From IMG/VR virus record IMGVR_UViG_3300047321_000238, positions 62,001 through 126,000 of that record: 64,000 nucleotides of DNA; one strand, written 5' to 3'. The notes below the pieces were generated by a model. The model ran no database searches. It was not told the DNA's origin and worked only from the letters and a program-made list of their open reading frames with translations. Within the stretch, counting starts at the first letter, position 1; each line of letters opens with the position of its first letter. Of this stretch, positions 5,260 to 54,575 are shown piece after piece. The translations under genes and the position numbers were made by a program.

Positions 5260-5320
5260 GATTAAAATAGCTATTGGTAATCTACTTAATCTAATATATA
5301 AATAATAAAATCCTATATAT

Positions 5321-5355
5321 AAATAAGCTTCGCAGTTTTAATCATGCGTATTATT
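5321..5355. repeat. Third full copy of the AAATAAGCTTCGCAGTTTTAATCATGCGTATTATT element
   Basis: Near-identical to 1873-1906. Confidence 0.8.
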
Positions 5356-5800
5356 TGTATATAGGTTGGACCCTTAATCCATGAAAAGACGATTGGAGCA
5401 TCTACGTATGTTGGGTATCGCAAAGTTTTCATTAATCCATCCCGTTCCTTATAGTATTATGCAGGATTTAGAATTCATTCTTGCATTCCTACTATAGGGA
5501 ATACCCCTAAAAAGACTCAATCTTGCAAGAAAAAGAAAACCAACTTTCAGAATTACTATTATTGTGGAATAGATTATAATATATGCAAATATATTTTTAA
5601 GCTATCTTAACACAATTATGGTTAATTTTTTTCAGAGTTGGACACTAGTGTAATATATATAACACCAATTAACAGCTAACGCAGTTATGGAAATAACACT
5701 TTGATATAGCTTAAAGTATATTTGCTGTTAATACACAATTCGTACTTACGAGTGCCGTAGATGCATATGCGACATAAAGTTAAGATGGATTTGTGCTTCC

Positions 5801-5988
5801 GAGTGCGAGCGTTAGCGAGCACGTATAATTAAATAGCGTTAGCGTCAATTATATAATAGCGTTAGCGTCAAAATTAAATAAAGCGTTAGCGTAGATTTAT
5901 AAATAGATATAATCTTCTATAGTATACCCATACTATTATGAAGTATATCGTCCTACAATTCCATTCAGTGACAGTTATAGCGTTAGCG
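5801..5988. repeat. Five direct repeats of AGCGTTAGCG in AT-rich spacers (iteron-like)
   Basis: Copies at 5808, 5835, 5858, 5882, 5979. Confidence 0.85.
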
Positions 5989-6351
5989 TTTAATAACAAG
6001 CGTAGAATCGATTGTATCATCTATTAAGAGTAGCCATGTGTATACATACTACTAAACTTTAATAGATGCAACGTTGAACACGTAGTGCGAAACACAATAA
6101 AATTATAATAATTTCTCTATACCTACCTAGCAGAATGTAAGTGATGTGGTAGTAGAGGATTAGGAGTCATATCTCCGTTTTAAAGAAATGGCACTCGTAG
6201 ACCTGAACCAAGACGGTTTTGGGACGTAATCGGTGCTTTCACGTTATAATGGATATAAGCGTAGTGAGTAGTCTAAAAACGAACGGATTACTATTACAGT
6301 AGTATATATACTTATATACACACATGGAATAAAAATAAAGGAGATTATAAT

Positions 6352-6582
6352 ATGCCTAATTATAATAGAATAAAACAAGAATTAATTAATAAAAGAATTG
6401 AAGAAAGATATGATGGAGTAGATATGTTAACATCACGTCTTACTAATGGAGATATAGCTATTAAATGTAATGATATAGATAATAAGTGTAACCATCCTAA
6501 TGGTTGTTGTATATTAAGTTTACAAGAATTTCAAGAATGGAATTGTAAATGTGCATATCAAAATAAGTATTACTTTAGGTAA
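6352..6582 (+). CDS. Cys-containing hypothetical protein
   Basis: AAGGAG SD; six Cys in the C-terminal half. Confidence 0.7.
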   Translation: MPNYNRIKQELINKRIEERYDGVDMLTSRLTNGDIAIKCNDIDNKCNHPNGCCILSLQEFQEWNCKCAYQNKYYFR

Positions 6583-6599
6583 GAAAGGATATATAATAG

Positions 6600-6932
6600 A
6601 TGGAAGTATTAAAGTATATTAATGATACGTTAGTATCATATACATTAGCTGAACTATATGATAATAGAATAGGAATATCTGTAAGTAACGTAGAAGAGTT
6701 TATAGACATAATCGATAAATTAGATGCAACAGGTTTAGTGTATATGCCTACCGATGTAAAACGAGATAAGGTAGCATTGTACAATAGAGGTACAAGTAAA
6801 AATAGTTGTATATTAATAGAAAGAAGACCTGACCTAGGTAAATGTGAATATATATTAAGGTATTATTCAGAAGACTATGTAACTATGTATGCTGGCACTA
6901 TAAAGAAGTATAGTGAGGTGACATTAGTATAA
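6600..6932 (+). CDS. tag-array paralog 1 (MEVLKYIN)
   Basis: Shared N-terminal peptide and YT(L/I)..L...I.I.V..EEF core. Confidence 0.85.
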   Translation: MEVLKYINDTLVSYTLAELYDNRIGISVSNVEEFIDIIDKLDATGLVYMPTDVKRDKVALYNRGTSKNSCILIERRPDLGKCEYILRYYSEDYVTMYAGTIKKYSEVTLV

Positions 6933-7252
6933 TGGAGTTGTTAAAGCATATTAATGATATGGCAAATACGTATACTATAAGTAAGCTGTTAAATACAAAC
7001 GCTATAGTACAGTGTGATAGTAAAGAAGAGTTTATGCAGTTAATATATAAGATAAACTGTACATCGTATCTACATACAACCCTTAGTGGTAGTACATGGG
7101 ATATTTATAATAACCAGGATAGATATAATGGAAGTATGGCAATATACTTTAACAGTAGACATCTAGAGTTTTGTTACGTAGATTATTATAAAACATATAG
7201 ACGTAAGAACCCTAAGTATAAGTATAGTGAAGTAAATATAGTAACTATATAG
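6932..7252 (+). CDS. tag-array paralog 2 (MELLKHIN)
   Basis: TAATG overlap; family core and FC..DYY motif. Confidence 0.85.
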   Translation: MELLKHINDMANTYTISKLLNTNAIVQCDSKEEFMQLIYKINCTSYLHTTLSGSTWDIYNNQDRYNGSMAIYFNSRHLEFCYVDYYKTYRRKNPKYKYSEVNIVTI

Positions 7253-7260
7253 AGTATGCA

Positions 7261-7293
7261 GAGTTTTTCTTCTGCACGCGAACATATGTTTAT
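7261..7293 (+). promoter_or_regulatory. Repeated intergenic motif TTTTTC-T(C/T)TGCACGC-(G/A)AACATATGTT-TAT, copy 1
   Basis: Matches 9793-9826 and partly 9444-9462; contains the palindrome AACATATGTT. Confidence 0.6.
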
Positions 7294-7319
7294 TATATGA
7301 AAGGAGATTAAGCAAGTCT

Positions 7320-7667
7320 ATGAGTATAGAGTTATTAGATTATATAAATAAGAATAGTAAAAAGTCTTATACTATACAACAGATGATAGATGATAAGATA
7401 GCAATTCAAGTATGTAGTAGAGAAGAGTTGCAAAATCTTATAGATATAAGAAGTAGTCATGGTTGTATTGGGTGTACAGTAGAATCATGGGATACGTATG
7501 TAATAAAATATAACAAAAAGAGATATAATGGTCGGATGTGTTTAGCATTTCAAAGACCAGGATTTCTTGATTTCTGTGATACAGGATATTATCTAAACCA
7601 AGGATATACTATAGTGCCTTATACAAGTCTAGTTATAATAGATAGTGATAAGGTGGTGTTAATATAA
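7320..7667 (+). CDS. tag-array paralog 3 (MSIELLDYIN)
   Basis: KIAIQVCSREE, FCDTGYYLNQGY. Confidence 0.85.
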   Translation: MSIELLDYINKNSKKSYTIQQMIDDKIAIQVCSREELQNLIDIRSSHGCIGCTVESWDTYVIKYNKKRYNGRMCLAFQRPGFLDFCDTGYYLNQGYTIVPYTSLVIIDSDKVVLI

Positions 7668-7984
7668 TGGAAGTATTAAGTCATATTAATAATATACAAA
7701 GGTTTAGTATGTCAGACTTTATAGATAAAGGATATGTAATAAAGGTATGTCATAGAGCTGGACTAGAAGCTATAGTAGAGTATTTAGATAATCATGGTGT
7801 AGAAGTTAACGATGATATACGTGGAGCTGATGATAGAAGATGTGAATACTTATGTTTAAGACTAGGAGGATGGACAGATAAGAGTGGTAACATAACAGGT
7901 TATTGTGCATGGCAAGCAAACTATGAACACTATAAGAGTAGAGGATGTACTATGTACGATTATGATGAGGTGGTGTTAGTATAA
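7667..7984 (+). CDS. tag-array paralog 4 (MEVLSHIN)
   Basis: TAATG overlap; family pattern. Confidence 0.85.
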   Translation: MEVLSHINNIQRFSMSDFIDKGYVIKVCHRAGLEAIVEYLDNHGVEVNDDIRGADDRRCEYLCLRLGGWTDKSGNITGYCAWQANYEHYKSRGCTMYDYDEVVLV

Positions 7985-7985
7985 T

Positions 7986-8318
7986 ATGGAGTTATTAAAA
8001 GAAGTAAATGAATTTAATAAGTATAGAATACGAGATATAATACGTAATAGCATGGATATATTAATACATACACCTAAGGAAGAAGACTTAATTATATTAT
8101 ATAACAAGTTAATTGAATTAGGATATATAATAAGTGATCACATGTTGCATATATATAGTTCGTATAAAGAAGAGACATGTATAAGATTCTATAAGTATAC
8201 TAGTCAAAGTAGTGTAGCAAATGAATTAGGAATGAGTTATGCTGATAAACCATGGTATATCGAGAATGAAAAACAAATGAAGATAATAAACATGGGGGAC
8301 ATAGTATGGAAGTATTAA
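7986..8318 (+). CDS. tag-array paralog 5 (MELLKEVN)
   Basis: IHTPKEE, KEETCI, YADKPWY. Confidence 0.85.
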   Translation: MELLKEVNEFNKYRIRDIIRNSMDILIHTPKEEDLIILYNKLIELGYIISDHMLHIYSSYKEETCIRFYKYTSQSSVANELGMSYADKPWYIENEKQMKIINMGDIVWKY

Positions 8319-8620
8319 GATATATTAATGATGTAGTATATGGTATGTATACTATAGAAGAATTAATAAATAAGAAGATAGCAGTACATGTACCTACAAA
8401 AGAAAAATTTAATAATATGCAAGATATGCTTATATTATTATATGGCAATAAAATAAAAACATTATCTTATGATAAAATAGGTAGGTATGCAAAGTTAATG
8501 TGTATTAACGTAGAGAGTAGTACAGGACCATATCAATATGACATGGTTATAAGTTATTGCGATAAACAATGGTATCTGGATAATGGTTATACTGTTATAA
8601 GTATGGATAGTATAAGATGA
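8306..8620 (+). CDS. tag-array paralog 6 (MEVLRYIN)
   Basis: KIAVHVPTKE, YCDKQWYLDNGY. Confidence 0.85.
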   Translation: MEVLRYINDVVYGMYTIEELINKKIAVHVPTKEKFNNMQDMLILLYGNKIKTLSYDKIGRYAKLMCINVESSTGPYQYDMVISYCDKQWYLDNGYTVISMDSIR

Positions 8621-8808
8621 GTAAAGAATTATTAAGTTATATAATAGTAATGTTTATTACGGGTTTCTTAATAGGAATAATGGGAAACCTAATGGGCTCA
8701 CCAAGTAAAAATAATATATTTATAGATGCTATATTATTTGGAATATTCATGATATTTTATCCATTTTATATTATTATATATGAAATAAGAAACAATAGAA
8801 AGAAGTGA
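8617..8808 (+). CDS. small membrane protein with tag-like start (MSKELLSYI)
   Basis: Two hydrophobic segments; ATGA overlap. Confidence 0.7.
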   Translation: MSKELLSYIIVMFITGFLIGIMGNLMGSPSKNNIFIDAILFGIFMIFYPFYIIIYEIRNNRKK

Positions 8809-8815
8809 AAATATC

Positions 8816-9127
8816 ATGGAGATATTAAGTTATATAAATGATATAGCCTTTAACACGTATACTATAAAACAGTTAATAGGTAATAAGATAGCAGTGCATG
8901 TACCCACGCTTAAAGAATTCAAAGATATGCAAGAGATAGTTAAAGCACACAATAAAGATGTATATATAATGGATGATAGTATATATAATTGTATGAAAGA
9001 GGAGACATGTCTTAATATAGAAAATTGGAGCGGAGATTGTATATGTGATATACAAATAGAATATTGCGATAAACAATGGTATATAGATAATGGTTATAAG
9101 ATTATAAGTATGGAGGATATAAGATGA
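8816..9127 (+). CDS. tag-array paralog 7 (MEILSYIN)
   Basis: KIAVHVPTLKE, KEETCL, YCDKQWYIDNGY. Confidence 0.85.
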   Translation: MEILSYINDIAFNTYTIKQLIGNKIAVHVPTLKEFKDMQEIVKAHNKDVYIMDDSIYNCMKEETCLNIENWSGDCICDIQIEYCDKQWYIDNGYKIISMEDIR

Positions 9128-9438
9128 GTGTAGAACTATTAAATTATATAAACAAAGAAATGTTTAAGATTATAATAACAGTAGATGAACTAGTTAATAA
9201 TGGAGTAGTTATACATGTAAATAATAGAGAAGAACAGGAAGAGTTTTTCACCGCAGTATGTAATGTGGATATACATGTACCTGCTGATACTAGAATACAT
9301 TCATATAAAACACATGGAGATAAGCTGTTACACTTAATACAAAATCATAATGGTTTATATAGAGTAATGTATGGCACTAAGATGTCATTAGGTAAGTATA
9401 GAGTATTAGAGTATAAAGATATAAGTATAGTTAAGTAA
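9124..9438 (+). CDS. tag-array paralog 8 (MSVELLNYIN)
   Basis: VVIHVNNREE core. Confidence 0.85.
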   Translation: MSVELLNYINKEMFKIIITVDELVNNGVVIHVNNREEQEEFFTAVCNVDIHVPADTRIHSYKTHGDKLLHLIQNHNGLYRVMYGTKMSLGKYRVLEYKDISIVK

Positions 9439-9443
9439 ACAAC

Positions 9444-9462
9444 GGTTTTTTCTTTGCACGCG
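9444..9462 (+). promoter_or_regulatory. TTTGCACGC motif, copy 2 (truncated)
   Basis: GGTTTTTTCTTTGCACGCG. Confidence 0.5.
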
Positions 9463-9483
9463 TAATAAGAAGGAGTGAACGTA

Positions 9484-9783
9484 GTGATTGAGTTATTAAA
9501 GTATATTAACAATGACTTCGTAAAAGAAGAAACTGTTGAAGCTATTAATAAAAGAAATAAGTTATTCAACGAACATGTATTAACATTAAGAAAAGATATA
9601 GAAGAACTTAATGATAGAATAGAACTAGATAATAAAAGAAAAAGTAAAGCATTATTTATTATAGTATCTTCTACTATAGTTAATCTTATAATACAATTAA
9701 TATCTATAAGTCTTTATATTAAAGTATCATCAGCTATAGTATATGTATTGCTATTACAATTAGTTATATGGAAGAAAGATTAA
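9484..9783 (+). CDS. coiled-coil + transmembrane protein with tag (MIELLKYIN)
   Basis: GTG start at 9484, 9 nt after AAGGAG; unrelated body. Confidence 0.75.
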   Translation: MIELLKYINNDFVKEETVEAINKRNKLFNEHVLTLRKDIEELNDRIELDNKRKSKALFIIVSSTIVNLIIQLISISLYIKVSSAIVYVLLLQLVIWKKD

Positions 9784-9792
9784 GTAGAAAAA

Positions 9793-9826
9793 GGTTTTTC
9801 TTTGCACGCAAACATATGTTTATATT
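9793..9826 (+). promoter_or_regulatory. TTTGCACGC-AAACATATGTT motif, copy 3
   Basis: Matches 7261-7293. Confidence 0.6.
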
Positions 9827-9844
9827 AAGAAGGAGTGATAAGTC

Positions 9845-10312
9845 ATGGAAGAATTGTTAGAATTATTGGGAGATAGAAGAATACCTAAGTATGAGGAGAC
9901 GACAGCATTTAATAACATACCTATTACAGATGAGTATGTAAAACATCAAATTATAAGTGAAGATAAAAAAGAAGTGAAGGCAATATTAAAAAGAATAAGG
10001 ACTAGCGGATTTCATTGCAATAGTACGAACAATTTAATAACTGTCATATTAGAGAACAAAGCTCTCTTAGATAAAATTAGTTTAGTAAAGGATGGTAGTT
10101 ATTTAAATACAAAGATACTTTTAAAACGTAATAGCAAACCATATATACTTATATATAGTGGAATTAAAACTGTATTAGGTGATAAAGTATTCGATTTGAA
10201 ATTTGATTATAGTGAAATAGAAATGTTAAATCTTATTACTGATAGAAGTGAAAGAGTATATATTAATATAAGAGATTATATAGATAGAGATAGATATAGA
10301 TGGAACTATTAA
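9845..10312 (+). CDS. hypothetical protein (MEELLELL)
   Basis: AAGGAGTG SD. Confidence 0.8.
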   Translation: MEELLELLGDRRIPKYEETTAFNNIPITDEYVKHQIISEDKKEVKAILKRIRTSGFHCNSTNNLITVILENKALLDKISLVKDGSYLNTKILLKRNSKPYILIYSGIKTVLGDKVFDLKFDYSEIEMLNLITDRSERVYINIRDYIDRDRYRWNY

Positions 10313-10629
10313 ATTATATAAACAACGTGTTAAATAAGTATAACTTTGATTATCTATATGATAATAAAGTAGCAATAAGAGTACCAACAGCAGACGATTA
10401 TTATATATTAGAGAAGATGATAAATGATTATTGTAAGAGAAAATATATATCAGTAAGATTATTACCATTCTTAAGGAATAGTAATTATATAAAAATACAT
10501 GCTACATGTATTAATATAGGACCAGAAACTATAACAAATCATTATGATATAAATATAAACTATTGTGATCAAGAATATTATATACAACAAGGATATACTA
10601 TAGTTAATATATCTGACTGTTGTATATAG
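10300..10629 (+). CDS. tag-array paralog 9 (MELLNYIN)
   Basis: KVAIRVPT, ATCI, YCDQEYYIQQGY. Confidence 0.85.
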   Translation: MELLNYINNVLNKYNFDYLYDNKVAIRVPTADDYYILEKMINDYCKRKYISVRLLPFLRNSNYIKIHATCINIGPETITNHYDININYCDQEYYIQQGYTIVNISDCCI

Positions 10630-10641
10630 GAGAGTAGTATA

Positions 10642-10854
10642 ATGGAACTATTAAAGTATATAAACAATTATAAACACAAGATGATGTGTGGCAGTACTAG
10701 TAGACAAAAAAGAGGATGTGACAATATCGATATAAAAGCATGTTGTATAACATGTAATAAGAGAGACGATTGTTACTTTGAATGTGCAGGCTCACAGACA
10801 GAAAGACATTATCGAAATATAGATGAGCCATGTGATAAAGGAGTAGTACTATGA
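10642..10854 (+). CDS. Cys-rich protein with tag (MELLKYIN)
   Basis: CCxxCx5Cx3C pattern. Confidence 0.8.
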   Translation: MELLKYINNYKHKMMCGSTSRQKRGCDNIDIKACCITCNKRDDCYFECAGSQTERHYRNIDEPCDKGVVL

Positions 10855-10982
10855 TGGAATTATTACAAGCAGTTAATAAAATGAATATGTATACTTTAAC
10901 AGATGTAGTCTATGCATTTACAAGAGGAAAGAAAATAGCAATAGAAATAAAAGATATTATAATAAAGAAGGAGTATTTATGA
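10851..10982 (+). CDS. truncated tag-array paralog, 43 aa (not in ORF track)
   Basis: MMELLQAVNKMNMYTLTDVVYAFTRGKKIAIEIKD...; AAGGAG SD; overlaps both neighbours. Confidence 0.65.
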   Translation: MMELLQAVNKMNMYTLTDVVYAFTRGKKIAIEIKDIIIKKEYL

Positions 10983-11347
10983 CCGAACTATTAAGTATGA
11001 TTAATAATTATTCTATAGGATATAGTTTAAACGATTTATATAATAAACATATAATAATTAGAATATTAAACAAAAAAGATTTATGTGATTTCATTGAAAT
11101 TTCTAATTATAATAATACAGTTAGAACCTTTAATGCAGAAAAAGTATGGAATAAATATGTAGAACCACTTAATAATTGTAATAAAATTATATGCATAGAA
11201 TTAGAAGTAAATGACGAAGAAGATAATTATGATTTTATGTTTACATTTGGAAGTATAAGTTATTATACTGATCCAATACTACATCGTGAAAATAAATATG
11301 AAATAGTAGATTATCATAAAGATATAATAAATAATTGGGAGATATAA
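10979..11347 (+). CDS. tag-array paralog 10 (MTELLSMIN)
   Basis: Family pattern. Confidence 0.85.
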   Translation: MTELLSMINNYSIGYSLNDLYNKHIIIRILNKKDLCDFIEISNYNNTVRTFNAEKVWNKYVEPLNNCNKIICIELEVNDEEDNYDFMFTFGSISYYTDPILHRENKYEIVDYHKDIINNWEI

Positions 11348-11350
11348 TTT

Positions 11351-11698
11351 ATGATTGAATTATTAAGTTTTGTTAATGATGAAACAAACATAAAAGAAAC
11401 AGTATATGTAGACGACATAGCTGGAAACAAAATAACATTAGAATTTTCTACTAAAGAAAGTTATATGATATTTTGTAAAGCTATGGACGAAACATATGAT
11501 ACTTATACTGAATATACAAAGAATGATGCATGGGAAGACTATATAGAAGATGAAGAGCAGAACAAAGATTTTAAAGGTAAGCTTGGTTTGAATCTACATG
11601 ATAATAAAAAAGGTTGGAACTATTGTGAAATTGATTGGTATAAAGATAATGGCTATAAAGTATATAAGTACGATGATATTATATTAAAGTACAATTAA
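11351..11698 (+). CDS. tag-array paralog 11 (MIELLSFVN)
   Basis: YCEIDWYKDNGY. Confidence 0.85.
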   Translation: MIELLSFVNDETNIKETVYVDDIAGNKITLEFSTKESYMIFCKAMDETYDTYTEYTKNDAWEDYIEDEEQNKDFKGKLGLNLHDNKKGWNYCEIDWYKDNGYKVYKYDDIILKYN

Positions 11699-11715
11699 AA
11701 AGGAAATGAAGAATA

Positions 11716-12042
11716 ATGAGGGAATTATTAAAACATATACAAGAGAATCAATATAAAATAGAAGATATTATAAAAGATAATGTAGCGTTGTATATTGATA
11801 ATAGAAAAGATTTAGATACTATAATAGAAGTAGCAAATAGACATAATATATTTATTGGGCCATTTATAAGAACATCATTAACGGATTCATATTGTAAAAA
11901 AGGAATCTTTATAAAGATAATACACATTAAAGAAAATGATTATTATGTGAAAGGATATAAATATAGATTAGGATGGAATTTCGATGATAATGATAAATCA
12001 CTCTTAACTGTATATAGTAGAGAGGATTATATATTAGTATAA
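11716..12042 (+). CDS. tag-array paralog 12 (MRELLKHIQ)
   Basis: YKIEDII..VALYI core. Confidence 0.8.
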   Translation: MRELLKHIQENQYKIEDIIKDNVALYIDNRKDLDTIIEVANRHNIFIGPFIRTSLTDSYCKKGIFIKIIHIKENDYYVKGYKYRLGWNFDDNDKSLLTVYSREDYILV

Positions 12043-12054
12043 GGAGAGATTAAT

Positions 12055-12366
12055 ATGGCCGAGCTATTAAAATATGTAAATGAAAATATTAAAGACAAAT
12101 ATACCGTAAAGATGATTATAGACAAAAGATTAGTAGTTAATGTAAAAACTAAAGAAGCGTTTAATGATATGCAGGATAAAATATGGGATTATAATCATAA
12201 AGTATGCTTTATAGATAATGATGTTTATTCCATACACAAATCACAAACATGCATTAAAGTAGAAAGAATAAATACATCGGAATATGATTTAAATATAGAA
12301 TTTTGTGACAAACAATGGTATATAGATGAAGGCTATCAAATAATTGATATAGGAAAAGTAATATAA
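12055..12366 (+). CDS. tag-array paralog 13 (MAELLKYVN)
   Basis: QTCI, FCDKQWYIDEGY. Confidence 0.85.
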   Translation: MAELLKYVNENIKDKYTVKMIIDKRLVVNVKTKEAFNDMQDKIWDYNHKVCFIDNDVYSIHKSQTCIKVERINTSEYDLNIEFCDKQWYIDEGYQIIDIGKVI

Positions 12367-12545
12367 TGGAGCTATTAAAATACATTAATACTCACATATA
12401 TAAAAGAAAATGTAAGTATGGATGTAGATATAAAGAAGATGAAGATGAACATATATGTTGTCATGATTGTGATCGTATAGATATATGTGACGCAGTCTGT
12501 TTCTCTTTAGATGAAAAGGAATGTGACTTCACTATTAAGGAATAA
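12366..12545 (+). CDS. Cys-rich protein with tag, 59 aa (not in ORF track)
   Basis: MELLKYINTHIYKRKCKYGC...CCHDCDRIDICDAVC...; TAATG overlap. Confidence 0.75.
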   Translation: MELLKYINTHIYKRKCKYGCRYKEDEDEHICCHDCDRIDICDAVCFSLDEKECDFTIKE

Positions 12546-12559
12546 GAAGGAGATGTATT

Positions 12560-13084
12560 ATGAGCGTTAAAGATGATTTACTACAAGAATTAAATAAAGT
12601 TTTAGCATTACAAGAAGAAATGGCTAAAAGAGTAGAAATAGTAAAAACTAAAATATTAGAGGAAGAAAATAAGAAAGTATTTTGGACACCAACTCATGGG
12701 CAACAATATTACTATATAAATAACGAAGTGATCGTTCTAGGCTGTCCTTATGACAATAACTGGCGTAGTGATAAAGTAAGAATAAAAAATCTTAACTATT
12801 ACGAAACAGAAAAAAAATGTGAAAGAGCCATATTTGAACAAATTTTAAACAGAAAATTGAATAAATTTGCTCATGAAAACAATGAAGAAGAAATTGATTG
12901 GAGTAATCCAGTGCAAGCTAAATATATGATAATATATGACAATGATTCAAAAAAGCTTGAAGCTAGTATCTATAGTCATATTCAATCTTTTGGACAAGTA
13001 TATTTCACATCAAAAGAAATAGCAGAACGAGCAATTAAAAATTTTAAAGATGATTTAATAAGATCTTTTACTACTAAGGAGTAA
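12560..13084 (+). CDS. hypothetical phage protein
   Basis: AAGGAG SD; IDW.N..Q.KY and VYFTSKEIAERAI motifs typical of Firmicute phage proteins. Confidence 0.8.
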   Translation: MSVKDDLLQELNKVLALQEEMAKRVEIVKTKILEEENKKVFWTPTHGQQYYYINNEVIVLGCPYDNNWRSDKVRIKNLNYYETEKKCERAIFEQILNRKLNKFAHENNEEEIDWSNPVQAKYMIIYDNDSKKLEASIYSHIQSFGQVYFTSKEIAERAIKNFKDDLIRSFTTKE

Positions 13085-13090
13085 TAATCT

Positions 13091-13717
13091 ATGGAAATAT
13101 TAAAACATATAAATGAATTAAAAACTAAAGGAATAGCATATATATGTTACGATACTGGAGGTAGTGGAGAAGATGGTAGAAGATTATACGCACGCAATAT
13201 ATATGATTATTATAAAGAATTATACTTCGATGTAGTAGTATTAAGCTATAGTACTCACGCAAAATATAATAATATAGATAATATTCTACCACAAGGAACT
13301 GGTGGCACTTATATGTCATCGCCATTAACTTTATTAATGCAAGATGCAGAGAGAGTTAAAAACGATAAAGAACTATGTCATTATGCTTACAACTTCAATC
13401 CTAATAATATAATTGTATTAGTAGGGGATGGAGATAACTGGAGTGAAGATAATGATAGATTCTGTAGATGTATAGAAGAGATAACAAAAACTAATAGTGT
13501 TGTATATCATGAAATATTAGGAGGTTCACATCATGATAATACAATGTACAAGCGGTTAAAAGCTAAAAGATATTCAAAGGTTCATCTCTATAAAGTAGAG
13601 AAAGAACAAGATATATTTGGCAATAAGAAAAAACAAATAAAAGGTGCCGATTATTATACTGCTATAACTGAAGATTTAGTAGATAGTATATTTGATTGGG
13701 ATGTATCATATGAATAA
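13091..13717 (+). CDS. vWA-like protein resembling the YhbH/YeaH (DUF444) C-terminus, with tag (MEILKHIN)
   Basis: DTGGS, GGTYMSS, DGDNWSEDNDR, YHEI. Confidence 0.75.
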   Translation: MEILKHINELKTKGIAYICYDTGGSGEDGRRLYARNIYDYYKELYFDVVVLSYSTHAKYNNIDNILPQGTGGTYMSSPLTLLMQDAERVKNDKELCHYAYNFNPNNIIVLVGDGDNWSEDNDRFCRCIEEITKTNSVVYHEILGGSHHDNTMYKRLKAKRYSKVHLYKVEKEQDIFGNKKKQIKGADYYTAITEDLVDSIFDWDVSYE

Positions 13718-19380: not shown

Positions 19381-19595
19381 TGAGATGGAAAAAGATAATC
19401 AAGAAATTTCCTAAGATAGGAGATACAAGAGTAATTAGTTATTTCGCATTACTTTTAGTAGAAATAGATAAAGAAGTAAGATGGCTTGAAAAAGTAACAG
19501 TAAAACAAATAAGAGCATATAAGTACTATGGTCCTTGTGGTCAATACGGTCCACATTGGAAGAATATAAAATTTATAGATGAAGAGGTGAAATAA
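19380..19595 (+). CDS. hypothetical protein
   Basis: Coupled ORF. Confidence 0.65.
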   Translation: MRWKKIIKKFPKIGDTRVISYFALLLVEIDKEVRWLEKVTVKQIRAYKYYGPCGQYGPHWKNIKFIDEEVK

Positions 19596-20371
19596 TGTTA
19601 AAGTTTATTGGAAGAGGATCTTGTTTTAATTCAAAAGAAGGAAACAATTCAGCTTATATAAAAAAAGGTGAAAGTTTCTTATTAATAGATTGTGGTTGTC
19701 TAACTGCAAATAAGATAATTGAATCAAATTTATTAGATGGAGTAAAGAAAGTTCATATATTAATAACGCATTTCCACGATGATCATGTTGGTAGCTTGGG
19801 AAGCTTACTATTATATTGTCGTTATGCATTAGATATAATACCAGATATATATTTTGAAGACAAACAGTATTTAGTTGATTTCTTAGCTATGCAAGGACTA
19901 TTAGAACATGAAGTTTATACGTATATGACAAATAGATATGTTGACGATATGAAATTAACTTATTCTCCAGTTCCAACAAAACATTATGAATTTTATAAGC
20001 CAATTCAAGAGACTGTTTATTCAAGTGAAATAACAAAGACTGTAGTCATGACAAATTACTTTAAATGCTATGGATATTATCTTGTAAAAAATAATATTGA
20101 AAGAACAAATCAACATGCATATTATTCTGGAGACAGCAATTCAATTCCAAAAAATATGTTAGATATATTAGAATTTTATGATTCAGCAATTTTATATCAA
20201 GATGTATGCTTATCAGATGAACATGGATATGCTCATTTACCTCTAAGTAAGTTATGTGAATTAATACCTAAAGAATTAAGACATAAAGTATATTGTATGC
20301 ATTTGAACTCAGATGAATTAATAACTAAATGTAAAGAAGAAGGATTCAACGTTGTTGAAGTGGAGGTTTAA
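19595..20371 (+). CDS. metallo-beta-lactamase fold hydrolase (RNase Z-like)
   Basis: LIDCG, THFHDDHVG, YSGDS, AH, MH motifs. Confidence 0.85.
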   Translation: MLKFIGRGSCFNSKEGNNSAYIKKGESFLLIDCGCLTANKIIESNLLDGVKKVHILITHFHDDHVGSLGSLLLYCRYALDIIPDIYFEDKQYLVDFLAMQGLLEHEVYTYMTNRYVDDMKLTYSPVPTKHYEFYKPIQETVYSSEITKTVVMTNYFKCYGYYLVKNNIERTNQHAYYSGDSNSIPKNMLDILEFYDSAILYQDVCLSDEHGYAHLPLSKLCELIPKELRHKVYCMHLNSDELITKCKEEGFNVVEVEV

Positions 20372-21663: not shown

Positions 21664-23718
21664 ATGGGATTAGCATTTAGAAATTTTAAAAAAATATTTC
21701 AAGGAAATTTTGAGGGACTAGTAAAAGATGAAAGTAAATTATTTGAGGTAACAGTAGATAAAGATGAATTATGGTATTTATATCTTAATTCATTCCCAGC
21801 TGGCACTAATGAAATGTATAGAAACAGAAGAGAATTTGATTGTTCTTGCTGTAGACAATTCATGAGAGCTGTAGCTAGTGCCGTTACTATAAAAAATAAT
21901 AAAATAGTTACTATGTGGGACTTTGACGCACAAAGTACTACGTTCCAACCAGTAATTGATGCATTAGATGCTTATATCAAATCTAAAGCTATCAATAGTG
22001 TTTATGTTAGTAAGCTTAAGAAAATAGGTACTGACAGCAATAGAGAATTAGTAGATGGAAATGCAAACACTTGGGAACATTTCTTTTTAGAACTTCCAGA
22101 TAAGTTTGTTGATAGAAGTGATAAGTCTGAAGGAGATATCCAAGGAACTTATAGATCTACTAAAGATGTATTTAAAAGATCTTTAGAAGAATTAACAGTA
22201 GAATCAGTTGAAACATTATTGGAATTAATTGCTTCTAATTCTTTGTATAAAGGTGAAGAATGGAAAGCTGCATTAACAGAATTCTTAAAGCTTAAAAAAG
22301 AATATGAAAAATTACCAGAAGAAGAAAAAGATTTATACGCTTGGGTTAAATCAGTTGATGTCAATATGGCTGTTGGTAGAATAAGAAATCATTCTATCGG
22401 AGTACTTCTTGTTGATCTAAGTGAAGGTATGGATCTAGAAAAAGCTATTAATAAATATGAAACTGTAATTGTAGCACCAGAAAACTTCAAGAGAAAGAGA
22501 GTGTTATATACTTCTAGACAATTAGAAGAAGGTAAAACAAAATTAACTGAAGGAGGATATATGCCAGCACTTCCAAGAAGACATGCTAATCTTGATGATA
22601 TAAGTGTTAACAACATTTTATTTAGCAACAAAGATTCAGCTAAAAGAATGAAAGGAACTGACATATTTGATGAAATGGCAAGTGCTGTTCCAGTTAATCC
22701 TAAGAAGTTCAATAAAGTTGAAGAAATTGCTATAGAAGACTTTGTTAAAAATGTGCTTCCATTAACAAGAGAAGTTGAAGTATATTTAGAAAATAAACAT
22801 TCTAATAACATGATGTCATTGATAACTGCACAAGATGCAGAAGCACCATCTATGTTTAAATGGAATAATCCTTTCTCATGGGCATACTCAGGTAATATCA
22901 CTGACTCTTCTATGAAAGAAAGAGTAAAAGCAGCTGGTGGTGGTGTAGACGGTGTATTAAGATTTAGTATACAATGGAATTCAGGAACTGCCCATGATAG
23001 AAATGATTTAGATGCACATTGTAAAGAACCAGAAAATTATGAAATTTATTTCAACAATAGACACAAGATTAGTCCAACTGGAGGAAAATTAGATGTAGAT
23101 ATTACTAATCCTAGAATTGGAATTCCTGCAGTAGAAAATATAACATGGGCAAATACAAGCAGTATGAAAGAAGGAACTTATAGATTCTTCGTTGATGGTT
23201 TTGCTAATAGAGGAGGTCGTGATGGCTTTACTGCTGAAATAGAATTCAACGGTCAAATCTTCTCATTCGAATACAATAAAGAAGTAAGAGATAAAGAAAA
23301 AGTCATGGTTGCTGAAGTCACTTATAGCAAAGAAAATGGATTCAGTATTAAAGAATTATTACCATCTACTGTGTCTTCGAAAGAAGTATGGGGATTAAAT
23401 ACTAATCAATTTGTACCAGCAAGTGTTGTTATGTTCTCACCAAATTTTTGGGATGAACAAGAAGGAATTGGACATAAGCACTATTTCTTCATGTTGAAGA
23501 ATTGCGTTAACCCAGAGAAACCAAACGGTTTCTATAACGAATTCTTAAACAATGATTTAACACCTATTGCAAGAGTTACTGAATTCTTAGGAAGTAAAAT
23601 GGCTGTGCAAGATGTTAAGGATCAATTATCAGGAGTAGGATTCTCTTCTACTAAGAGGAACAATCTTATAGTAAAAGTAAAAGGTCAAACTGAAAGAGTA
23701 TTAAAAATAATATTTTAA
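21664..23718 (+). CDS. large conserved phage protein, 684 aa, with YfaP/DUF2135-like C-terminal segment
   Basis: FDCSCCRQF; LRFSIQWN...DLDAHC...GKLDVD. Confidence 0.7.
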
Positions 23719-36093: not shown

Positions 36094-37524
36094 ATGTTAA
36101 AAGATATTAGAAAAAATCCAATTAAGTTAACTGATTGCTATAACTTATCACATGAGGAATTAAAATGTAATACAGACTTTGAAGTTTCTCATATGTATAA
36201 TAGAGCAGACGGAATGTTATTATATGGCTTTAAAGAAATTGCATTAGGTATTCTTAGTATAAAGATTACAGAAGAAATGGTTGAAGATGCAGCAGTTGAT
36301 GCTGAAGAATTAAACTTAACTTTCCCTAAAGATTTATGGATGAGAGTAGTTACAGAATGTAGAGGATATGTTCCATTAGAAGTTCAATCAGTTCCAGAAG
36401 GAACATGGTGCCCTAAAGGAACTCCATTTGCTCAAGTAAGAAATACCGTAGAAGGTTTCGGAGAAATGGTTACATGGTTTGAAGGCGTGTTTATGATGGC
36501 GTATTTCCCATCTACATGTGCAACTAGAGCATTTGAAATGAGAAACTATTTAGAAGAAAAGAAAGAACAATACGGATACGATGATAGCTTTCTATGGAGA
36601 TTTCATAGTTTTGGATTCAGAGGACATAAAAGCTTGGAAGATGCGTACTTCGCAGGAACTGCATGGTCAACATTCTTATTAGGAACAGATGATTTCCATA
36701 TAAGACAACACATGTCAGAAGATACTGTTATGGGAAGTATTGCAGCGTTAGCTCATAAAGTTACGCAACAATATGATAATGAATATGATTGTTTCATTCG
36801 TTCAATAGATTATGCAGCTGCAAGCGGTAAGAATATCGTAGCTTTAGTTATAGATACTTACAATGCATATAGAGTTATTCAAGAATATGTGTTAAAATTA
36901 GCTGAGTATGCTAAAGGAAAAGGAGTTCATATTGTATTTAGACCAGATAGTGGAGACATTTTTGGACAAGCAATGGCTATATATACAAGAGTTTCAACTG
37001 CAGGTTATAAAAATGTAAGTGTAATAATTGGAGAAGGTATGAGTTTTAATAATGCTAAATCAATGGATAAAAAATTTGAGTTAATGGGAGTGCCATTAAC
37101 ATTTATTGCTTATGGTATAGGAGCAGGATTCTATAAAGATATAGAAAGAGATACTTTAGGATGGGCAATGAAGACTGGTTATTCTAATGGAGCTCCAAGA
37201 ATGAAAGTAGTTAAGTCGGATCCATTTAAGCAATCAATACCTGGGATTGTAGATTTAATGTACGATGAAGATGATTTAATGACAGTATATATAGAAAAAG
37301 AAGATAATGCTGCTGATTCAATATATGAATGTATATATAGATATGATCTTGATCAAAATACAACACCTTCTATGAAAGACTTATCTTATATTCCTGCACA
37401 AGCTATTAAGGATAGAGCATACAATACTACAGGATATAGAGTTGGAGAAAAAATACAAGAAAGAATAATCATATCTAATGAAATTAAAGAACTTATAAAT
37501 GTAATAACAAAAAAATATGAATAA
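36094..37524 (+). CDS. nadV: nicotinamide phosphoribosyltransferase (NAMPT/NadV)
   Basis: TDCYNLSH, FHSFGFRG, GTD, AHKV, VIDTY, RPDSG, GEG, GIGAG. Confidence 0.85.
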   Translation: MLKDIRKNPIKLTDCYNLSHEELKCNTDFEVSHMYNRADGMLLYGFKEIALGILSIKITEEMVEDAAVDAEELNLTFPKDLWMRVVTECRGYVPLEVQSVPEGTWCPKGTPFAQVRNTVEGFGEMVTWFEGVFMMAYFPSTCATRAFEMRNYLEEKKEQYGYDDSFLWRFHSFGFRGHKSLEDAYFAGTAWSTFLLGTDDFHIRQHMSEDTVMGSIAALAHKVTQQYDNEYDCFIRSIDYAAASGKNIVALVIDTYNAYRVIQEYVLKLAEYAKGKGVHIVFRPDSGDIFGQAMAIYTRVSTAGYKNVSVIIGEGMSFNNAKSMDKKFELMGVPLTFIAYGIGAGFYKDIERDTLGWAMKTGYSNGAPRMKVVKSDPFKQSIPGIVDLMYDEDDLMTVYIEKEDNAADSIYECIYRYDLDQNTTPSMKDLSYIPAQAIKDRAYNTTGYRVGEKIQERIIISNEIKELINVITKKYE

Positions 37525-46301: not shown

Positions 46302-46494
46302 TATGGTAGATAATAAAAAAGATAATGCATTTATTGAAAAAATTGCTAAAGAAATTGATGAAAATAAAATACACATAGGAATTGAAAATATATTAGAACT
46401 AGTTTATGATATGGGAGTTAAAGAAGGAAAAGCATTGGTAGTAAAAAATGCTGTTGAATTCATAAGTAAGTAAATAATCTTGAGGGGGATTAAA

Positions 46495-47553
46495 ATGAAT
46501 AAAATATCAGACATGCCAAAGAAAGGTGTATGGTTTGCTAAAGCATTACCACCACATAGAGGTCATTTAAGTACAATATTACAAGCTGCTACACAAGTAC
46601 AACAATTAGATGTAATTGTATCAGAGCATGAAGAAGGAAATGGTAAACTGTGTAGAAATGTCGGAATACCATATATGCCAGGAGCAAAAAGAGTACAATG
46701 GCTTAGTCAGGAATTAATGGACATGCCTCATATTACCGTTAAGTTACTTAATGAAAATAATATGCCTGTATATCCTAATGGATGGGATATGTGGACTCAA
46801 GAATTACAAAAAGTTGCAGGAGAAAAAATAGATATGTTTTTCTGCGGTAAAAAAGATATAGATGTATATGGACCAAAATTAAAGAGTTATTTTCCAGGAG
46901 TTAAAGTTACAGCGTATGATACAGATACTTGTTACTTTAATATATCAGCTACAGAGATCAGAAGTAATCCAATTAAGCATTGGGACTATATATTAGGACC
47001 AGCAAGACCATTCTTTGCTAAGAAAATATTAATAGCTGGAACTGAAAGCACAGGTAAGACTACTTTAACTAAAACTTTAGCTAAGATGTATCATACATCA
47101 TGGAGTGAAGAAGTAGGAAGATATTATGCAACGCAATATCTAGGAGGTAATGAAAATTACTTTACTGATGAAGACTTTACAAGAATAGCTCATTTGCAAG
47201 TTGAACAAGATCATCAAGCATTAAGAAACTGTAATAGAGTTTGTTTCTTTGATACAGACGCTACAGCAACAGATTACTTCAGTCAATTATATATGGGACA
47301 TAGCAATAGCATAGTTAGAAGCTATATAGATCCTGATAAGTATGACATAGTGTTCATGTTGAAGCCTGATGTTGAATGGGTAGATGATGGCATGAGATTA
47401 AATGGATCACAAGAGCAAAGAATTAAACTTCATAATAAATTAAAAGATATGTATGATAATTTAGGATTTAAAGTAGTTGAAGTAGGTGGAACATACCAAG
47501 AAAGACTTAAATTTATATTATCAAAAATAGATGAAATGATTGGGGGAAAATAA
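46495..47553 (+). CDS. nadR: NadR-like NMN adenylyltransferase / ribosylnicotinamide kinase
   Basis: PPHRGH (HxGH), NISATEIR, GTESTGKTT, FFDTD, WVDDGMR. Confidence 0.9.
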   Translation: MNKISDMPKKGVWFAKALPPHRGHLSTILQAATQVQQLDVIVSEHEEGNGKLCRNVGIPYMPGAKRVQWLSQELMDMPHITVKLLNENNMPVYPNGWDMWTQELQKVAGEKIDMFFCGKKDIDVYGPKLKSYFPGVKVTAYDTDTCYFNISATEIRSNPIKHWDYILGPARPFFAKKILIAGTESTGKTTLTKTLAKMYHTSWSEEVGRYYATQYLGGNENYFTDEDFTRIAHLQVEQDHQALRNCNRVCFFDTDATATDYFSQLYMGHSNSIVRSYIDPDKYDIVFMLKPDVEWVDDGMRLNGSQEQRIKLHNKLKDMYDNLGFKVVEVGGTYQERLKFILSKIDEMIGGK

Positions 47554-53086: not shown

Positions 53087-53173
53087 GGAAGAGTGGCCGA
53101 GATGGTTGATGGCGGCAGACTGTAAATCTGTTCTGTAAAAAGCACGTTGGTTCGAATCCAACCTTTTCCACCA
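53087..53173 (+). tRNA. tRNA-Tyr(GTA)
   Basis: Cloverleaf, long variable arm, CCA. Confidence 0.95.
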
Positions 53174-53412
53174 AAGTCTAAGGTTAAGATATATTCACTC
53201 AATTGACTTGAATTGAATAAAGTTACACATTAGGTTAGTAATACTTTGATTAAAGATATATTCATCAGAATATTGATAGTCAATTATAACTATACGTAAT
53301 ATGGATGTTTCTGAACTTCAGCCCCTGTGGTACATAAATATGTGAGAAATATCGGAGTATTCTAATTAGGAATATGTGTCTAGTAGTAGGTCGGGACTAG
53401 ACAAAATAATAT

Positions 53413-54570: not shown

Positions 54571-54575
54571 TATAT

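What the first reader, a model, noticed from the sequence alone, without database searches (positions are those of the whole stretch)
6600..12366. Tandem hyper-diverged expansion of a ~105-aa domain (13 copies plus a fragment)
Seen: a common scaffold YT[IL]..L...K[IV]A[IV].V.T.EE ... TC[IL] ... [YF]CD..WY...GY.[IV] with highly variable middles. The closest copies (8306, 8816, 12055) share CDKQWY while others are barely alignable. The pattern recalls an unannotated domain usually seen in one copy in Firmicute phages. Inference: an accordion of diversified binders such as anti-defence or host-takeover variants, under arms-race selection.
Basis: partly seen in the sequence, partly recalled or inferred. 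Interest (0 to 1): 0.78.

Follow-up and report, generated by a model that had tools for sequence, protein, structure and literature searches.

The report
Tagged small-gene family in jumbo phage
A 248-kb phage, probably of a Gram-positive host, carries 13 very divergent tandem genes for one small unannotated protein fold, and each starts with the same eight-residue N-terminal tag that about 14 unrelated small proteins of this phage group also carry, which points to a shared, still unknown addressing signal.

Summary
Window 6600-12366 contains 13 intact paralogous genes of 103-122 aa plus one 43-aa truncated copy. They are separate, mostly translationally coupled genes, not domains of one protein.

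All 13 pass leave-one-out HMM tests. AF2 models of a typical copy and of the most divergent copy show the same order of secondary-structure elements. The fold has no match among solved structures and no Pfam family. It recurs as an unannotated N-terminal or repeated domain in early-region proteins of Bacillota-type phages.

The array is not a recent accordion. Median pairwise identity is 23%. Several copies have closer relatives in other phages than in their own genome. Two related jumbo phages hold 5 and 6 copies in the same slot. The two orthologous pairs give dN/dS of 0.37-0.45.

Conservation is confined to the hydrophobic core. Surfaces and two loops are hypervariable.

The most conserved part is an N-terminal octapeptide, M-E-[LIV]-L-x-[YH]-[IV]-N. 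It also heads about 14 unrelated small-protein families in this phage clade and is absent from homologues outside the clade.

Best reading: an old, fast-turning-over battery of early, cytoplasmic binding modules that share an address tag. Their targets and the tag's receptor are unknown.

The parts
6600..6932 (+). family copy 1 (110 aa), tag MEVLKYIN
   Evidence: Orthologue in L014 is 58% identical.
6932..7252 (+). family copy 2 (106 aa). Its start overlaps the stop of copy 1 (TAATG).
   Evidence: Orthologue L014 11311-11637 is 55-56% identical.
7320..7667 (+). family copy 3 (115 aa), tag preceded by MS
7667..7984 (+). family copy 4 (105 aa), divergent
   Evidence: Nearest relative is P0026, from another phage.
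7986..8318 (+). family copy 5 (110 aa)
8306..8620 (+). family copy 6 (104 aa), CDKQWY subgroup
8816..9127 (+). family copy 7 (103 aa), the copy modelled by AF2
   Evidence: pLDDT 86, pTM 0.76. Nearest relative is P0003.
9124..9438 (+). family copy 8 (104 aa), divergent, lacks the Cys and YCD motifs
10300..10629 (+). family copy 9 (109 aa)
10851..10982 (+). truncated copy (43 aa): tag, first strand and start of the first helix only
10979..11347 (+). family copy 10 (122 aa)
   Evidence: Nearest relatives are P0034 and P0014.
11351..11698 (+). family copy 11 (115 aa)
11716..12042 (+). family copy 12 (108 aa), the most divergent copy, also modelled by AF2
   Evidence: pLDDT 72, pTM 0.65, same order of secondary-structure elements
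12055..12366 (+). family copy 13 (103 aa), CDKQWY subgroup
10642..10854 (+). interspersed 8-Cys mini-protein (70 aa) carrying the same tag
12366..12545 (+). second 8-Cys mini-protein (59 aa) with the tag, paralogue of 10642
   Evidence: E about 1e-7. Orthologue in L014 is 81% identical.
9484..9783 (+). interspersed tag-bearing protein with a hydrophobic C-terminal half. The likely start is GTG 9484, not 9475.
7263..7306 (+). intergenic element TTTCTTCTGCACGCGAACATATGTTTAT, copy 1 of 3
9440..9470 (+). intergenic element, copy 2 of 3
9794..9835 (+). intergenic element, copy 3 of 3
13091..13717 (+). DUF444-like 208-aa protein carrying the same tag. Its out-of-clade homologue has an 84-aa N-terminus in place of the tag.
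5260..6351 (.). conserved non-coding stretch with five AGCGTTAGCG(T) iterons, directly upstream of the operon

Best explanation
The region is an old, fast-turning-over multigene family in a 248-kb jumbo phage, most likely of a Gram-positive (Bacillota) host.

Shown:
- There are 13 intact genes and one truncated gene.
- They lie head to tail in four blocks with overlapping or nearly abutting stop and start codons. The Shine-Dalgarno sequence of each gene often lies inside the last codons of the gene before it. They are therefore almost certainly co-transcribed and translationally coupled.
- Each product has two parts. The first is an N-terminal octapeptide, M-E-[LIV]-L-x-[YH]-[IV]-N, modelled as a short, low-confidence helix. 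The second is a roughly 90-aa alpha/beta domain of an unannotated fold.
- In the domain only the hydrophobic core is conserved. Polar positions and two loops are hypervariable.
- The polar residues conserved in homologues outside the clade (His, Cys, Cys-Asp-Lys) are lost in about half of the copies.

Inferred:
- The domains act as diversified protein-binding modules rather than enzymes. They are made early in infection and aimed at different host or defence targets.
- The octapeptide is a peptide-level address tag that links these and about 14 other small-protein families of the clade to one common partner. That partner could be a chaperone, an unfoldase or a loading machine.
- The family grows and shrinks by gene birth and death in one hyperplastic slot.
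For: Family and genes:
- Family membership.
- Gene boundaries agree with public gene calls.
- Coupling: 18 of 21 gene junctions have a gap of 17 nt or less, or an overlap, with SD-like sequences in the preceding gene.

Fold:
- AF2 pLDDT 86 for a typical copy and 72 for the most divergent one, with the same element order.
- The tag segment scores only pLDDT 58 and 45.
- The models match viral and Bacillota clusters of the ESM Atlas over residues 12-103 (TM 0.6-0.77).

Conservation pattern:
- In 44 clade members E2 and L4 are invariant. Other conserved columns are hydrophobic. Positions 43-63 and 69-82 are hypervariable.

The tag is modular:
- 20 N-terminal occurrences in 132 ORFs, against 0.13 expected.
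- About 14-15 unrelated protein bodies carry it.
- Leaderless homologues exist for the domain and for the DUF444-like protein.
- Third codon positions of E2, I7 and N8 vary freely, and 0-2 residues may precede the Glu.

Turnover:
- 13, 5 and 6 copies in the same syntenic slot of three phages.
- Flanking genes are 65-94% identical, the best array orthologues 55-58%.
- Array dN is 2.5-3 times that of the flanks.
- More distant relatives lack both the family and the tag.

Purifying selection:
- dN/dS of 0.37-0.45 for the two orthologous pairs.

Context:
- The neighbourhood contains a homologue of the anti-Pycsar nuclease Apyc1 and NAD-salvage genes.
- Tag-bearing genes elsewhere in the genome sit among replication, SIR2 and Acb2/Tad1-hairpin genes, not structural genes.

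Host:
- The lysin carries choline-binding repeats.
- A 684-aa ORF is 60% identical to proteins of Bacillus phages.
Against: - No copy matches any known anti-defence, host-takeover or other characterised family.
- Timing of expression is inferred only from gene neighbourhood; no promoter class could be assigned.
- Gene-wide dN/dS is below 1, so positive selection is not shown.
- Surface clustering of the variable sites could not be computed, because model coordinates are not returned.
- Codon choice inside the tag departs from background (GAG, CTA and TTA enriched, p about 0.002-0.004). An additional RNA-level constraint is therefore possible.
- The partner of the tag is wholly hypothetical.
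Confidence: 0.42

Rival explanations
1. The tag is a capsid-targeting sequence like that of the T4 internal proteins. In this reading the tagged proteins, including the 13 copies, are packed into the head and injected with the DNA to meet host defences on entry.
For: [quoted passage not shown] The same logic appears here: one short N-terminal peptide heads many unrelated small proteins, and they sit in a hyperplastic locus.
Against: - No conserved protease cleavage motif follows the tag; positions 9-14 are hypervariable.
- One tagged protein has a hydrophobic, membrane-like C-terminal half.
- Tagged genes lie among early, replication and nucleotide-metabolism genes, not head genes.
- There are no virion proteomics.
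Confidence: 0.17
2. The array is a recent genomic accordion. In this reading a single gene was amplified under an ongoing arms race and the copies then diversified by positive selection.
For: - Tandem arrangement, and copy number differing between related phages.
- One subclade of five window copies (7986, 8306, 8816, 10300, 12055) lies within one supported clade.
- Segmental amplification of a counter-defence gene is known in T4 (10.1101/2022.04.14.488369, listed).
Against: - Median pairwise identity is 23% and the maximum 47%.
- At least five copies have nearer relatives in other phages than in their own genome.
- Median terminal branch length is 1.2 substitutions per site.
- dN/dS is 0.37-0.45.
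- No repeated DNA is left between copies beyond short stretches.
Confidence: 0.1
3. The domains are nucleic-acid-binding regulators, for example RegA-like translational repressors. In this reading the conserved start-of-gene sequence is their RNA operator rather than a peptide tag.
For: - ESM Atlas feature search lists RegA (PF01818) clusters at cosine 0.81-0.82.
- A local strand-helix match to the T4 RegA N-terminus recurs in three profile comparisons.
- Codon choice in the tag is biased.
Against: - hhalign probability is 2% or less.
- No RegA structure appears among the Foldseek or VIA-align matches.
- No Pfam PF01818 hit even at E <= 1.
- Most copies are acidic, with pI 4.4-6.8.
- Third codon positions of E2, I7 and N8 vary, and the distance from the AUG to the motif varies by 0-2 codons.
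Confidence: 0.05
4. The copies keep a small-molecule or nucleotide-related activity inherited from the domain's role next to DUF3310 ('kinase'), DUF3850 (ASCH) and DUF551 modules in other phages.
For: - Structural matches to the N-terminal part of DUF3310, DUF3850 and DUF1642 proteins.
- A weak hit to phrog_4897, annotated 'kinase'.
- Conserved His, Cys and Asp-Lys positions in homologues outside the clade.
Against: These polar positions are not kept in roughly half of the window copies. No nucleotide-binding motif is present. The fusion partners are themselves uncharacterised.
Confidence: 0.1
5. Most copies are functionless leftovers that drift neutrally.
For: Divergence is extreme, family motifs are lost in several copies, and there is one truncated copy.
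Against: - All 13 reading frames are open in a 29% GC genome.
- The hydrophobic core and the tag are conserved across 44 sequences from several phages.
- dN/dS is below 0.5.
- Coupling signals between genes are kept.
Confidence: 0.05

Closest known systems
T4-type internal proteins (IPI, IPII, IPIII and their variable relatives) with the capsid targeting sequence
   Same: One short conserved N-terminal peptide heads many otherwise unrelated small proteins. They are encoded in a locus that differs between related phages, and at least one T4 member is an anti-restriction protein (PMC3012670).
   Different: The tag sequence is different, and no protease site follows it. Tagged genes are spread through early and replication regions. 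Packaging into the virion is untested. The phage lineage is unrelated, and the host is probably Gram-positive.
Lineage-specific expansions in jumbo phages, for example the roughly 35 zinc-ribbon copies of Bacillus phage G
   Same: It is a large paralogous family of a small domain in a jumbo phage of a Bacillota host (PMC7824862).
   Different: The fold here is alpha/beta and unannotated. The copies are tandem and translationally coupled. They carry a tag that is shared with other families.
Genomic accordions: poxvirus K3L (own knowledge) and T4 tifA amplification (10.1101/2022.04.14.488369)
   Same: Tandem copies of a putative host-interaction gene, with copy number varying between relatives.
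   Different: Accordions are recent and their copies are nearly identical. Here the copies are 14-47% identical, and several have orthologues in other phages.
Unannotated N-terminal or repeated domain (consensus KIAIHCxTxEE ... ETC ... YCDKxWY..GYxII) of early-region proteins in Bacillota-type phages, found alone or next to DUF3310, DUF1642, DUF3850, DUF551 or zinc ribbons
   Same: It is the same domain by profile search (E down to 1e-16) and by predicted fold. It also tends to multiply: six domain copies lie in three neighbouring genes of the phage contig L016.
   Different: Those proteins lack the octapeptide, keep the polar consensus, and multiply the domain within one polypeptide rather than as separate genes.
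Multigene families of large eukaryotic DNA viruses (ASFV MGF, poxvirus ankyrin/PRANC; own knowledge)
   Same: Diversified paralogues with a shared short docking module and variable binding surfaces, evolving by birth and death.
   Different: The host domain of life is different, there is no sequence relationship, and the docking role of the tag is only hypothesised here.

Membership tests
   With the first 12 residues removed, every copy scores E <= 3.4e-4 in the leave-one-out HMM test.
   AF2 models of copy 8816 and of the most divergent copy 11716 have the same order of helices and strands. Both models match the same kind of ESM Atlas clusters. Caveat: both models used family alignments.
Genomic accordion (recent amplification) | Copies are nearly identical at the DNA level, and closer to each other than to genes of other genomes | tested here: not met
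   Copies are 14-47% identical at the protein level. Five copies or more have nearer relatives in other phages.
Arms-race (positively selected) family | dN/dS above 1, gene-wide or at clustered surface sites | tested here: inconclusive
   Gene-wide dN/dS is 0.37-0.45 for the two orthologous pairs. There are too few orthologues for site models, and no coordinates for surface mapping.
T4-like capsid-targeted internal proteins | Conserved N-terminal targeting peptide on diverse small proteins | tested here: met
   The octapeptide heads about 14-15 unrelated protein bodies.
T4-like capsid-targeted internal proteins | Prohead-protease cleavage site at the end of the targeting peptide | tested here: not met
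   No conserved residue follows N8; columns 9-14 have entropy of 2.5-3.3 bits.
T4-like capsid-targeted internal proteins | Presence in the virion and injection with the DNA | not testable with these tools
   This needs virion proteomics of an isolated phage.
RegA translational repressor (PF01818) | Sequence or profile similarity to RegA | tested here: not met
   No Pfam hit. hhalign probability is 2% or less against T4 RegA and against a profile of 120 RegA sequences.
RegA translational repressor (PF01818) | RegA fold | tested here: not met
   No RegA chain appears among the Foldseek PDB matches or the VIA-align wide matches (best Z 3.4).
Known anti-defence protein families in Pfam and PHROGs | Profile match to a described family | tested here: not met
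   No significant hit for any copy. The only related signal is a sub-threshold Tad2-like hit in the C-terminal part of one out-of-clade homologue, P0049.
Bacillota-phage KIAIHC...YCDKxWY domain (unnamed) | Profile-level homology over the whole domain | tested here: met
   The window-family profile finds these proteins at E from 1e-16 to 1e-3, covering profile positions of about 12-106. The class B profile finds 11 of the 13 window copies at E < 1e-4.

The most novel reading that the evidence does not exclude
The octapeptide M-E-[LIV]-L-x-[YH]-[IV]-N is a phage-wide protein-sorting signal. In this reading it routes 25 or more otherwise unrelated small proteins of this jumbo-phage clade to one machine or place. 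Candidates are loading into the virion for co-injection, a phage-encoded AAA+ unfoldase, or an infection compartment. The 13-gene array would be its largest and most diversified cargo family. Such a system would be a previously undescribed addressing mechanism in phages of Gram-positive hosts, analogous to but independent of the T4 capsid targeting sequence.
Probability: 0.3. Interest if true: 0.8.

Novelty: new variant of a known kind. Interest (0 to 1): 0.62.

Why it matters
Large phages carry many small genes of unknown function, and there are few handles for grouping them. Here a single eight-residue N-terminal peptide marks about one in six genes of a 64-kb stretch, across roughly 14 unrelated folds. 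It is absent from the same folds in phages outside the clade. This defines a testable set of proteins that probably share a fate or a partner. The 13-copy family is the richest member set for finding that partner and the diversified targets.

The domain itself has no solved or annotated relative, yet it recurs in early regions of many Bacillota phages and multiplies repeatedly. A structure and one identified ligand would therefore annotate a widespread phage module.

If the tag turns out to be a packaging or delivery signal, it would also be a practical tool for loading cargo into phages of Gram-positive bacteria.

Tried and rejected
- DNA similarity to 50,697 phage records: no match.
- tblastn of leaderless homologues, of the neighbouring 274-aa gene and of the DUF444-like gene against the same records: no match.
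- Pfam and PHROG scans of all copies and of 20 out-of-clade homologues: only sub-threshold noise.
- Solved structures by sequence profile: nothing below E 0.16.
- Solved structures by fold: Foldseek best E 1.3; VIA-align wide best Z 3.4, to ribosomal protein L31e, which is uninformative.
- BFVD: only weak matches.
- Word-indexed protein search with the class B profile: returned three already-known proteins.
- The search for related loci with the 13-copy alignment: failed for lack of a conserved block.
- RegA lead from the protein language-model search: tested and rejected.
- Double-glycine bacteriocin leader, Sec or TAT signal, and ClpX N-motif readings of the tag: considered by inspection and set aside, because the spacing or composition does not fit. 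These were not formally tested.
- Sigma-70 promoter and intrinsic terminator scans of the array: no better than shuffled sequence.
- Literature searches for the tag sequence, the sample accessions and DUF1642 function: nothing useful.
- A zinc site formed by His/Cys/Cys/Cys of the leaderless homologues: considered, but only one Cys is near-invariant.

Full report
**What the window is**

All long ORFs lie on the + strand, and GC content is about 29%. There are 16-19 tRNA genes at 53-58 kb. The window also encodes a nicotinate/nicotinamide phosphoribosyltransferase-family protein, an AAA_28 protein, a ClpX-like ATPase and an SPFH protein.

A pattern search showed that the window is part of IMG/VR contig IMGVR_UViG_3300047321_000238, which is 247,883 bp long. 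The window corresponds to contig positions of about 62,001-126,000. No phage record in GenBank/INPHARED resembles the region at the DNA level.

The host is probably a Gram-positive Bacillota. The lysin elsewhere on the contig combines glucosaminidase, amidase_3 and choline-binding repeats. A 684-aa ORF is 60% identical to proteins of Bacillus Tsarbomba-like phages.

**The observation**

Between 6600 and 12366 there are 13 + strand genes of 103-122 aa and one 43-aa remnant at 10851-10982. Two public gene callers give the same boundaries.

- BLASTP links all 13 genes.
- In leave-one-out HMM tests each copy is recovered at E from 1.7e-28 to 6.4e-7.
- With the first 12 residues removed each copy still scores E <= 3.4e-4.
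- A six-frame scan finds no further copy in the window.
- Pairwise identity is 14-47%, with a median of 23%.

These are separate genes, not domains of one protein. Five unrelated small genes lie among them: a 63-aa hydrophobic protein, a tagged protein with a hydrophobic C-terminal half, a 155-aa protein, and two 8-Cys mini-proteins that are paralogues of each other.

**Gene organisation**

Of 21 successive junctions from 6352 to 13717, 18 are overlaps or gaps of 17 nt or less. An SD-like sequence usually lies inside the end of the preceding gene. For example, the recurrent C-terminal 'E-V-x-L-V' is encoded by GAGGTG..., which also serves the next gene.

Only three gaps are longer, at 45-67 nt. 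Each holds a copy of one element, TTTCTTYTGCACGCRAA(CATATGTTTAT), which occurs nowhere else in the window. Consensus scans for sigma-70 promoters and intrinsic terminators were no better than on shuffled sequence.

**The fold**

AF2 on the 13-copy alignment gives a confident model of copy 8816, with pLDDT 86 and pTM 0.76. It has a short N-terminal helix (residues 3-12, pLDDT 58) followed by a compact alpha/beta domain. The most divergent copy, 11716, was modelled with a 44-sequence alignment. It has the same order of elements (pLDDT 72, pTM 0.65), and its first eight residues score below 50.

Nothing in the PDB resembles the fold:

- Foldseek best E is 1.3.
- VIA-align wide best Z is 3.4.
- A profile against PDB sequences gives a best E of 0.16.

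Residues 12-103 match other predicted structures:

- ESM Atlas clusters of small viral proteins, with TM 0.62-0.77 on both sides.
- The N-terminal part of proteins carrying DUF3850, DUF3310, DUF1642 or zinc ribbons, mostly from phages and Bacillota.
- One AlphaFold DB cluster, R6T3D1, at TM 0.61.
- Weak BFVD hits, including a DUF551 protein.

**Relatives**

An exhaustive profile search of 1.84 billion representatives found only 76 proteins at E <= 0.001. They fall into two classes.

Class A proteins are 100-125 aa long and begin with the same MELLKYIN-like peptide. They come from related phages, including a 259-kb contig (L013) and a 137-kb contig (L014).

Class B proteins lack that peptide and begin directly at the domain. 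Their consensus is KIAIHCxTxEE ... W..YKExTC ... YCDKxWY..GYxII. They often contain two or three tandem domain copies or extra C-terminal regions. Their context is the early, recombination or nucleotide-metabolism region of other phages:

- next to a DUF3799 nuclease, YopX and HTH genes in L001/L002;
- next to ribonucleotide reductase, DUF3310 and DUF551 genes in L016.

In L016, six domain copies sit in three neighbouring genes.

No Pfam family covers the domain.

**Evolution of the array**

L013 and L014 are syntenic with the window. The order is RNase H, a 274-aa gene, a long non-coding stretch, the array, a Cys-rich gene, a DUF444-like gene, then an SPFH gene and an Apyc1-like hydrolase. 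They hold 6 and 5 copies respectively, against 13 in the window.

- Between the window and L014, flanking genes are 65-94% identical.
- The best array pairs are 55-58% identical, and most copies have no orthologue.
- dS is not saturated, at 0.15-0.9.
- The two orthologous pairs have dN of 0.27-0.33, against a flank median of about 0.11.
- Their dN/dS is 0.37-0.45, against about 0.29 for the flanks.

A maximum-likelihood tree of 50 class A proteins has a median terminal branch of 1.2 substitutions per site. With support, it pairs 6600 with L014_10354, 6932 with L014_11311, 7667 with P0026, 10979 with P0034 and 8816 with P0003. Five window copies (7986, 8306, 8816, 10300, 12055) fall in one supported clade together with metagenomic sequences.

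More distant relatives, with 44% identity in the 274-aa gene, show neither the family nor the tag in the visible part of the slot.

The picture is an old family evolving by birth and death in a hyperplastic slot. Purifying selection acts on fold and tag, and the amino-acid rate is raised. It is not a recent accordion.

**Where the variation lies**

In the 44-sequence alignment, the conserved columns of the domain are almost all hydrophobic. In copy 8816 numbering they are Y15, I17, L20, I25, V27, V29, F35, M38, V42, C65, L66, I68, Y83, W88, Y89, Y94, I96, I97, M99 and I102.

Polar columns have entropy above 3 bits. Segments 43-63 and 69-82 are also variable in length. The polar consensus of class B (His, Cys, Cys-Asp-Lys) is missing from about half of the window copies.

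This fits a stable scaffold with diversified surfaces and argues against a shared catalytic site.

**The N-terminal octapeptide**

E2 and L4 are invariant in all 44 class A proteins. Position 7 is always aliphatic, and N8 is present in 82%.

The same peptide heads many other genes:

- the two Cys-rich genes;
- the DUF444-like gene at 13091;
- genes at 14869, 16819, 28605, 38624 and 49163;
- the tagged membrane-like gene at 9484;
- further genes elsewhere on the contig and in L013 and L014.

In the window there are 20 N-terminal occurrences among 132 ORFs, against 0.13 expected from the internal rate. With the tag removed, the tagged proteins fall into about 14-15 unrelated groups.

Homologues outside the clade lack the tag in both families where this could be checked. 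These are class B for the domain, and P0203 for the DUF444-like protein. P0203 has an 84-aa N-terminus in its place.

The constraint appears to act mainly on the peptide:

- Third codon positions of E2, I7 and N8 vary at or above background frequencies.
- Zero to two residues can precede the Glu.

A residual codon bias suggests that some RNA-level effect cannot be excluded. GAG, CTA and TTA are enriched, with p of about 0.002-0.004.

Tagged genes outside the window lie among helicase, primase, SIR2, Gam, NrdD and Acb2/Tad1-hairpin genes, not structural genes.

**Interpretation**

I commit to the following reading. The array encodes a battery of small cytoplasmic binding modules. They are made from a coupled operon in the early, accessory part of the genome, and each is probably directed at a different host or defence component. 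All carry a clade-specific address tag that connects them, and about 14 other small-protein families, to a common partner.

Shown: family membership, fold, coupling signals, the conservation pattern, turnover, purifying selection and the modularity of the tag.

Inferred: binding function, early timing, host-directed targets and the existence of a tag receptor.

The closest precedent is the T4 internal-protein system. There, diverse small anti-defence proteins share only a capsid targeting sequence (PMC3012670). However, the cleavage-site feature of that system is not met here, and packaging is untested.

Each is given with its evidence in the rival section. RegA was tested directly and not supported.

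**Novelty and score**

Paralogous expansions in jumbo phages are known, for example the roughly 35 zinc ribbons of phage G (PMC7824862). Leader-tagged diverse proteins are known in T4. What is new here:

- this unannotated fold as the expanded unit;
- its recurrent multiplication in unrelated phages;
- a different, clade-wide octapeptide on many unrelated small proteins of a probable Gram-positive jumbo phage.

I rate this a new variant of a known kind, with interest 0.62. Interest would rise to about 0.8 if the tag proves to be a sorting signal.

Noticed in passing
window 5260-6351: A 1.1-kb non-coding stretch lies directly upstream of the operon. It contains five AGCGTTAGCG(T) iterons plus one inverted copy. 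It is 85% nt-identical to L014 over 976 bp, which is more conserved than many neighbouring genes. The iterons are kept in all three related phages. It could be an origin of replication or a regulatory hub. There is no Rfam match.
   Followed up: partly
window 10642-10854 and 12366-12545; L013 10434, 11000, 13399, 14045; L014 12509: A second small family of 8-Cys mini-proteins (59-85 aa) carries the same N-terminal tag and is interleaved with the array. It is expanded to four copies in L013. This recalls the zinc-ribbon expansion reported for Bacillus phage G.
   Followed up: partly
window 7263-7306, 9440-9470, 9794-9835: Three copies of one intergenic element (TTTCTTYTGCACGCRAA, followed in two copies by CATATGTTTAT) occupy the only real gaps in the array. 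The element occurs nowhere else in the 64-kb window. It may be a local promoter or processing site, or a scar of duplication units.
   Followed up: partly
window 6900-6935, 7640-7670, 7955-7990 and other junctions: There is dual use of sequence at the junctions. The conserved C-terminal residues of many copies (E-V-x-L-V, K-V-V-L-I) are encoded by the GAGGTG or GGTGGTG Shine-Dalgarno sequence of the next gene, and stop and start codons overlap as TAATG or ATGA.
   Followed up: yes
window 19595-20371; 36094-37524; 46480-47553: Counter-defence-type genes lie in the neighbourhood. One is a metallo-beta-lactamase-fold hydrolase whose orthologues carry the Pfam Anti-Pycsar_Apyc1 domain. There are also a phosphoribosyltransferase-family gene and an AAA_28 gene that could form an NAD-salvage route.
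   Followed up: partly
window 53087-57952: This is a tRNA cluster. ARAGORN finds 16 genes, two with odd anticodon loops (2-nt and 4-nt anticodons) and one Asn(ATT). Rfam finds 19 tRNA matches, including three that ARAGORN missed (54781, 57100, 57435).
   Followed up: no
L016 6759-10404 (JGI 3300031972 contig, an unrelated phage): The same domain has multiplied independently here. Six copies are spread over three adjacent genes (148 aa, 351 aa with three copies, 195 aa with two copies), next to ribonucleotide reductase, DUF3310 and DUF551 genes.
   Followed up: partly
window 21664-23718: A 684-aa ORF is 60% identical to proteins of Bacillus Tsarbomba/BCP78-like phages (phrog_1735, function unknown). 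This is far closer than any other gene of the window is to a cultured phage. It is either a horizontally shared gene or a clue to the host.
   Followed up: no
L019 (same contig, 146778-167326): Elsewhere in the genome there are two SIR2-domain genes, an Acb2/Tad1-hairpin gene, Gam, an anaerobic ribonucleotide reductase and a lysin with choline-binding repeats. Four tagged small genes sit directly after the first SIR2 gene.
   Followed up: no
L007 2839-2862 (-); L003 9151; L011 9167: The tag-like N-terminus MEILKYIN / MEILKHIN also starts a holin-like membrane protein on an unrelated 40-kb viral contig, and a gene on two contigs binned as giant-virus MAGs. The number of such hits is compatible with chance for the pattern used.
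   Followed up: partly
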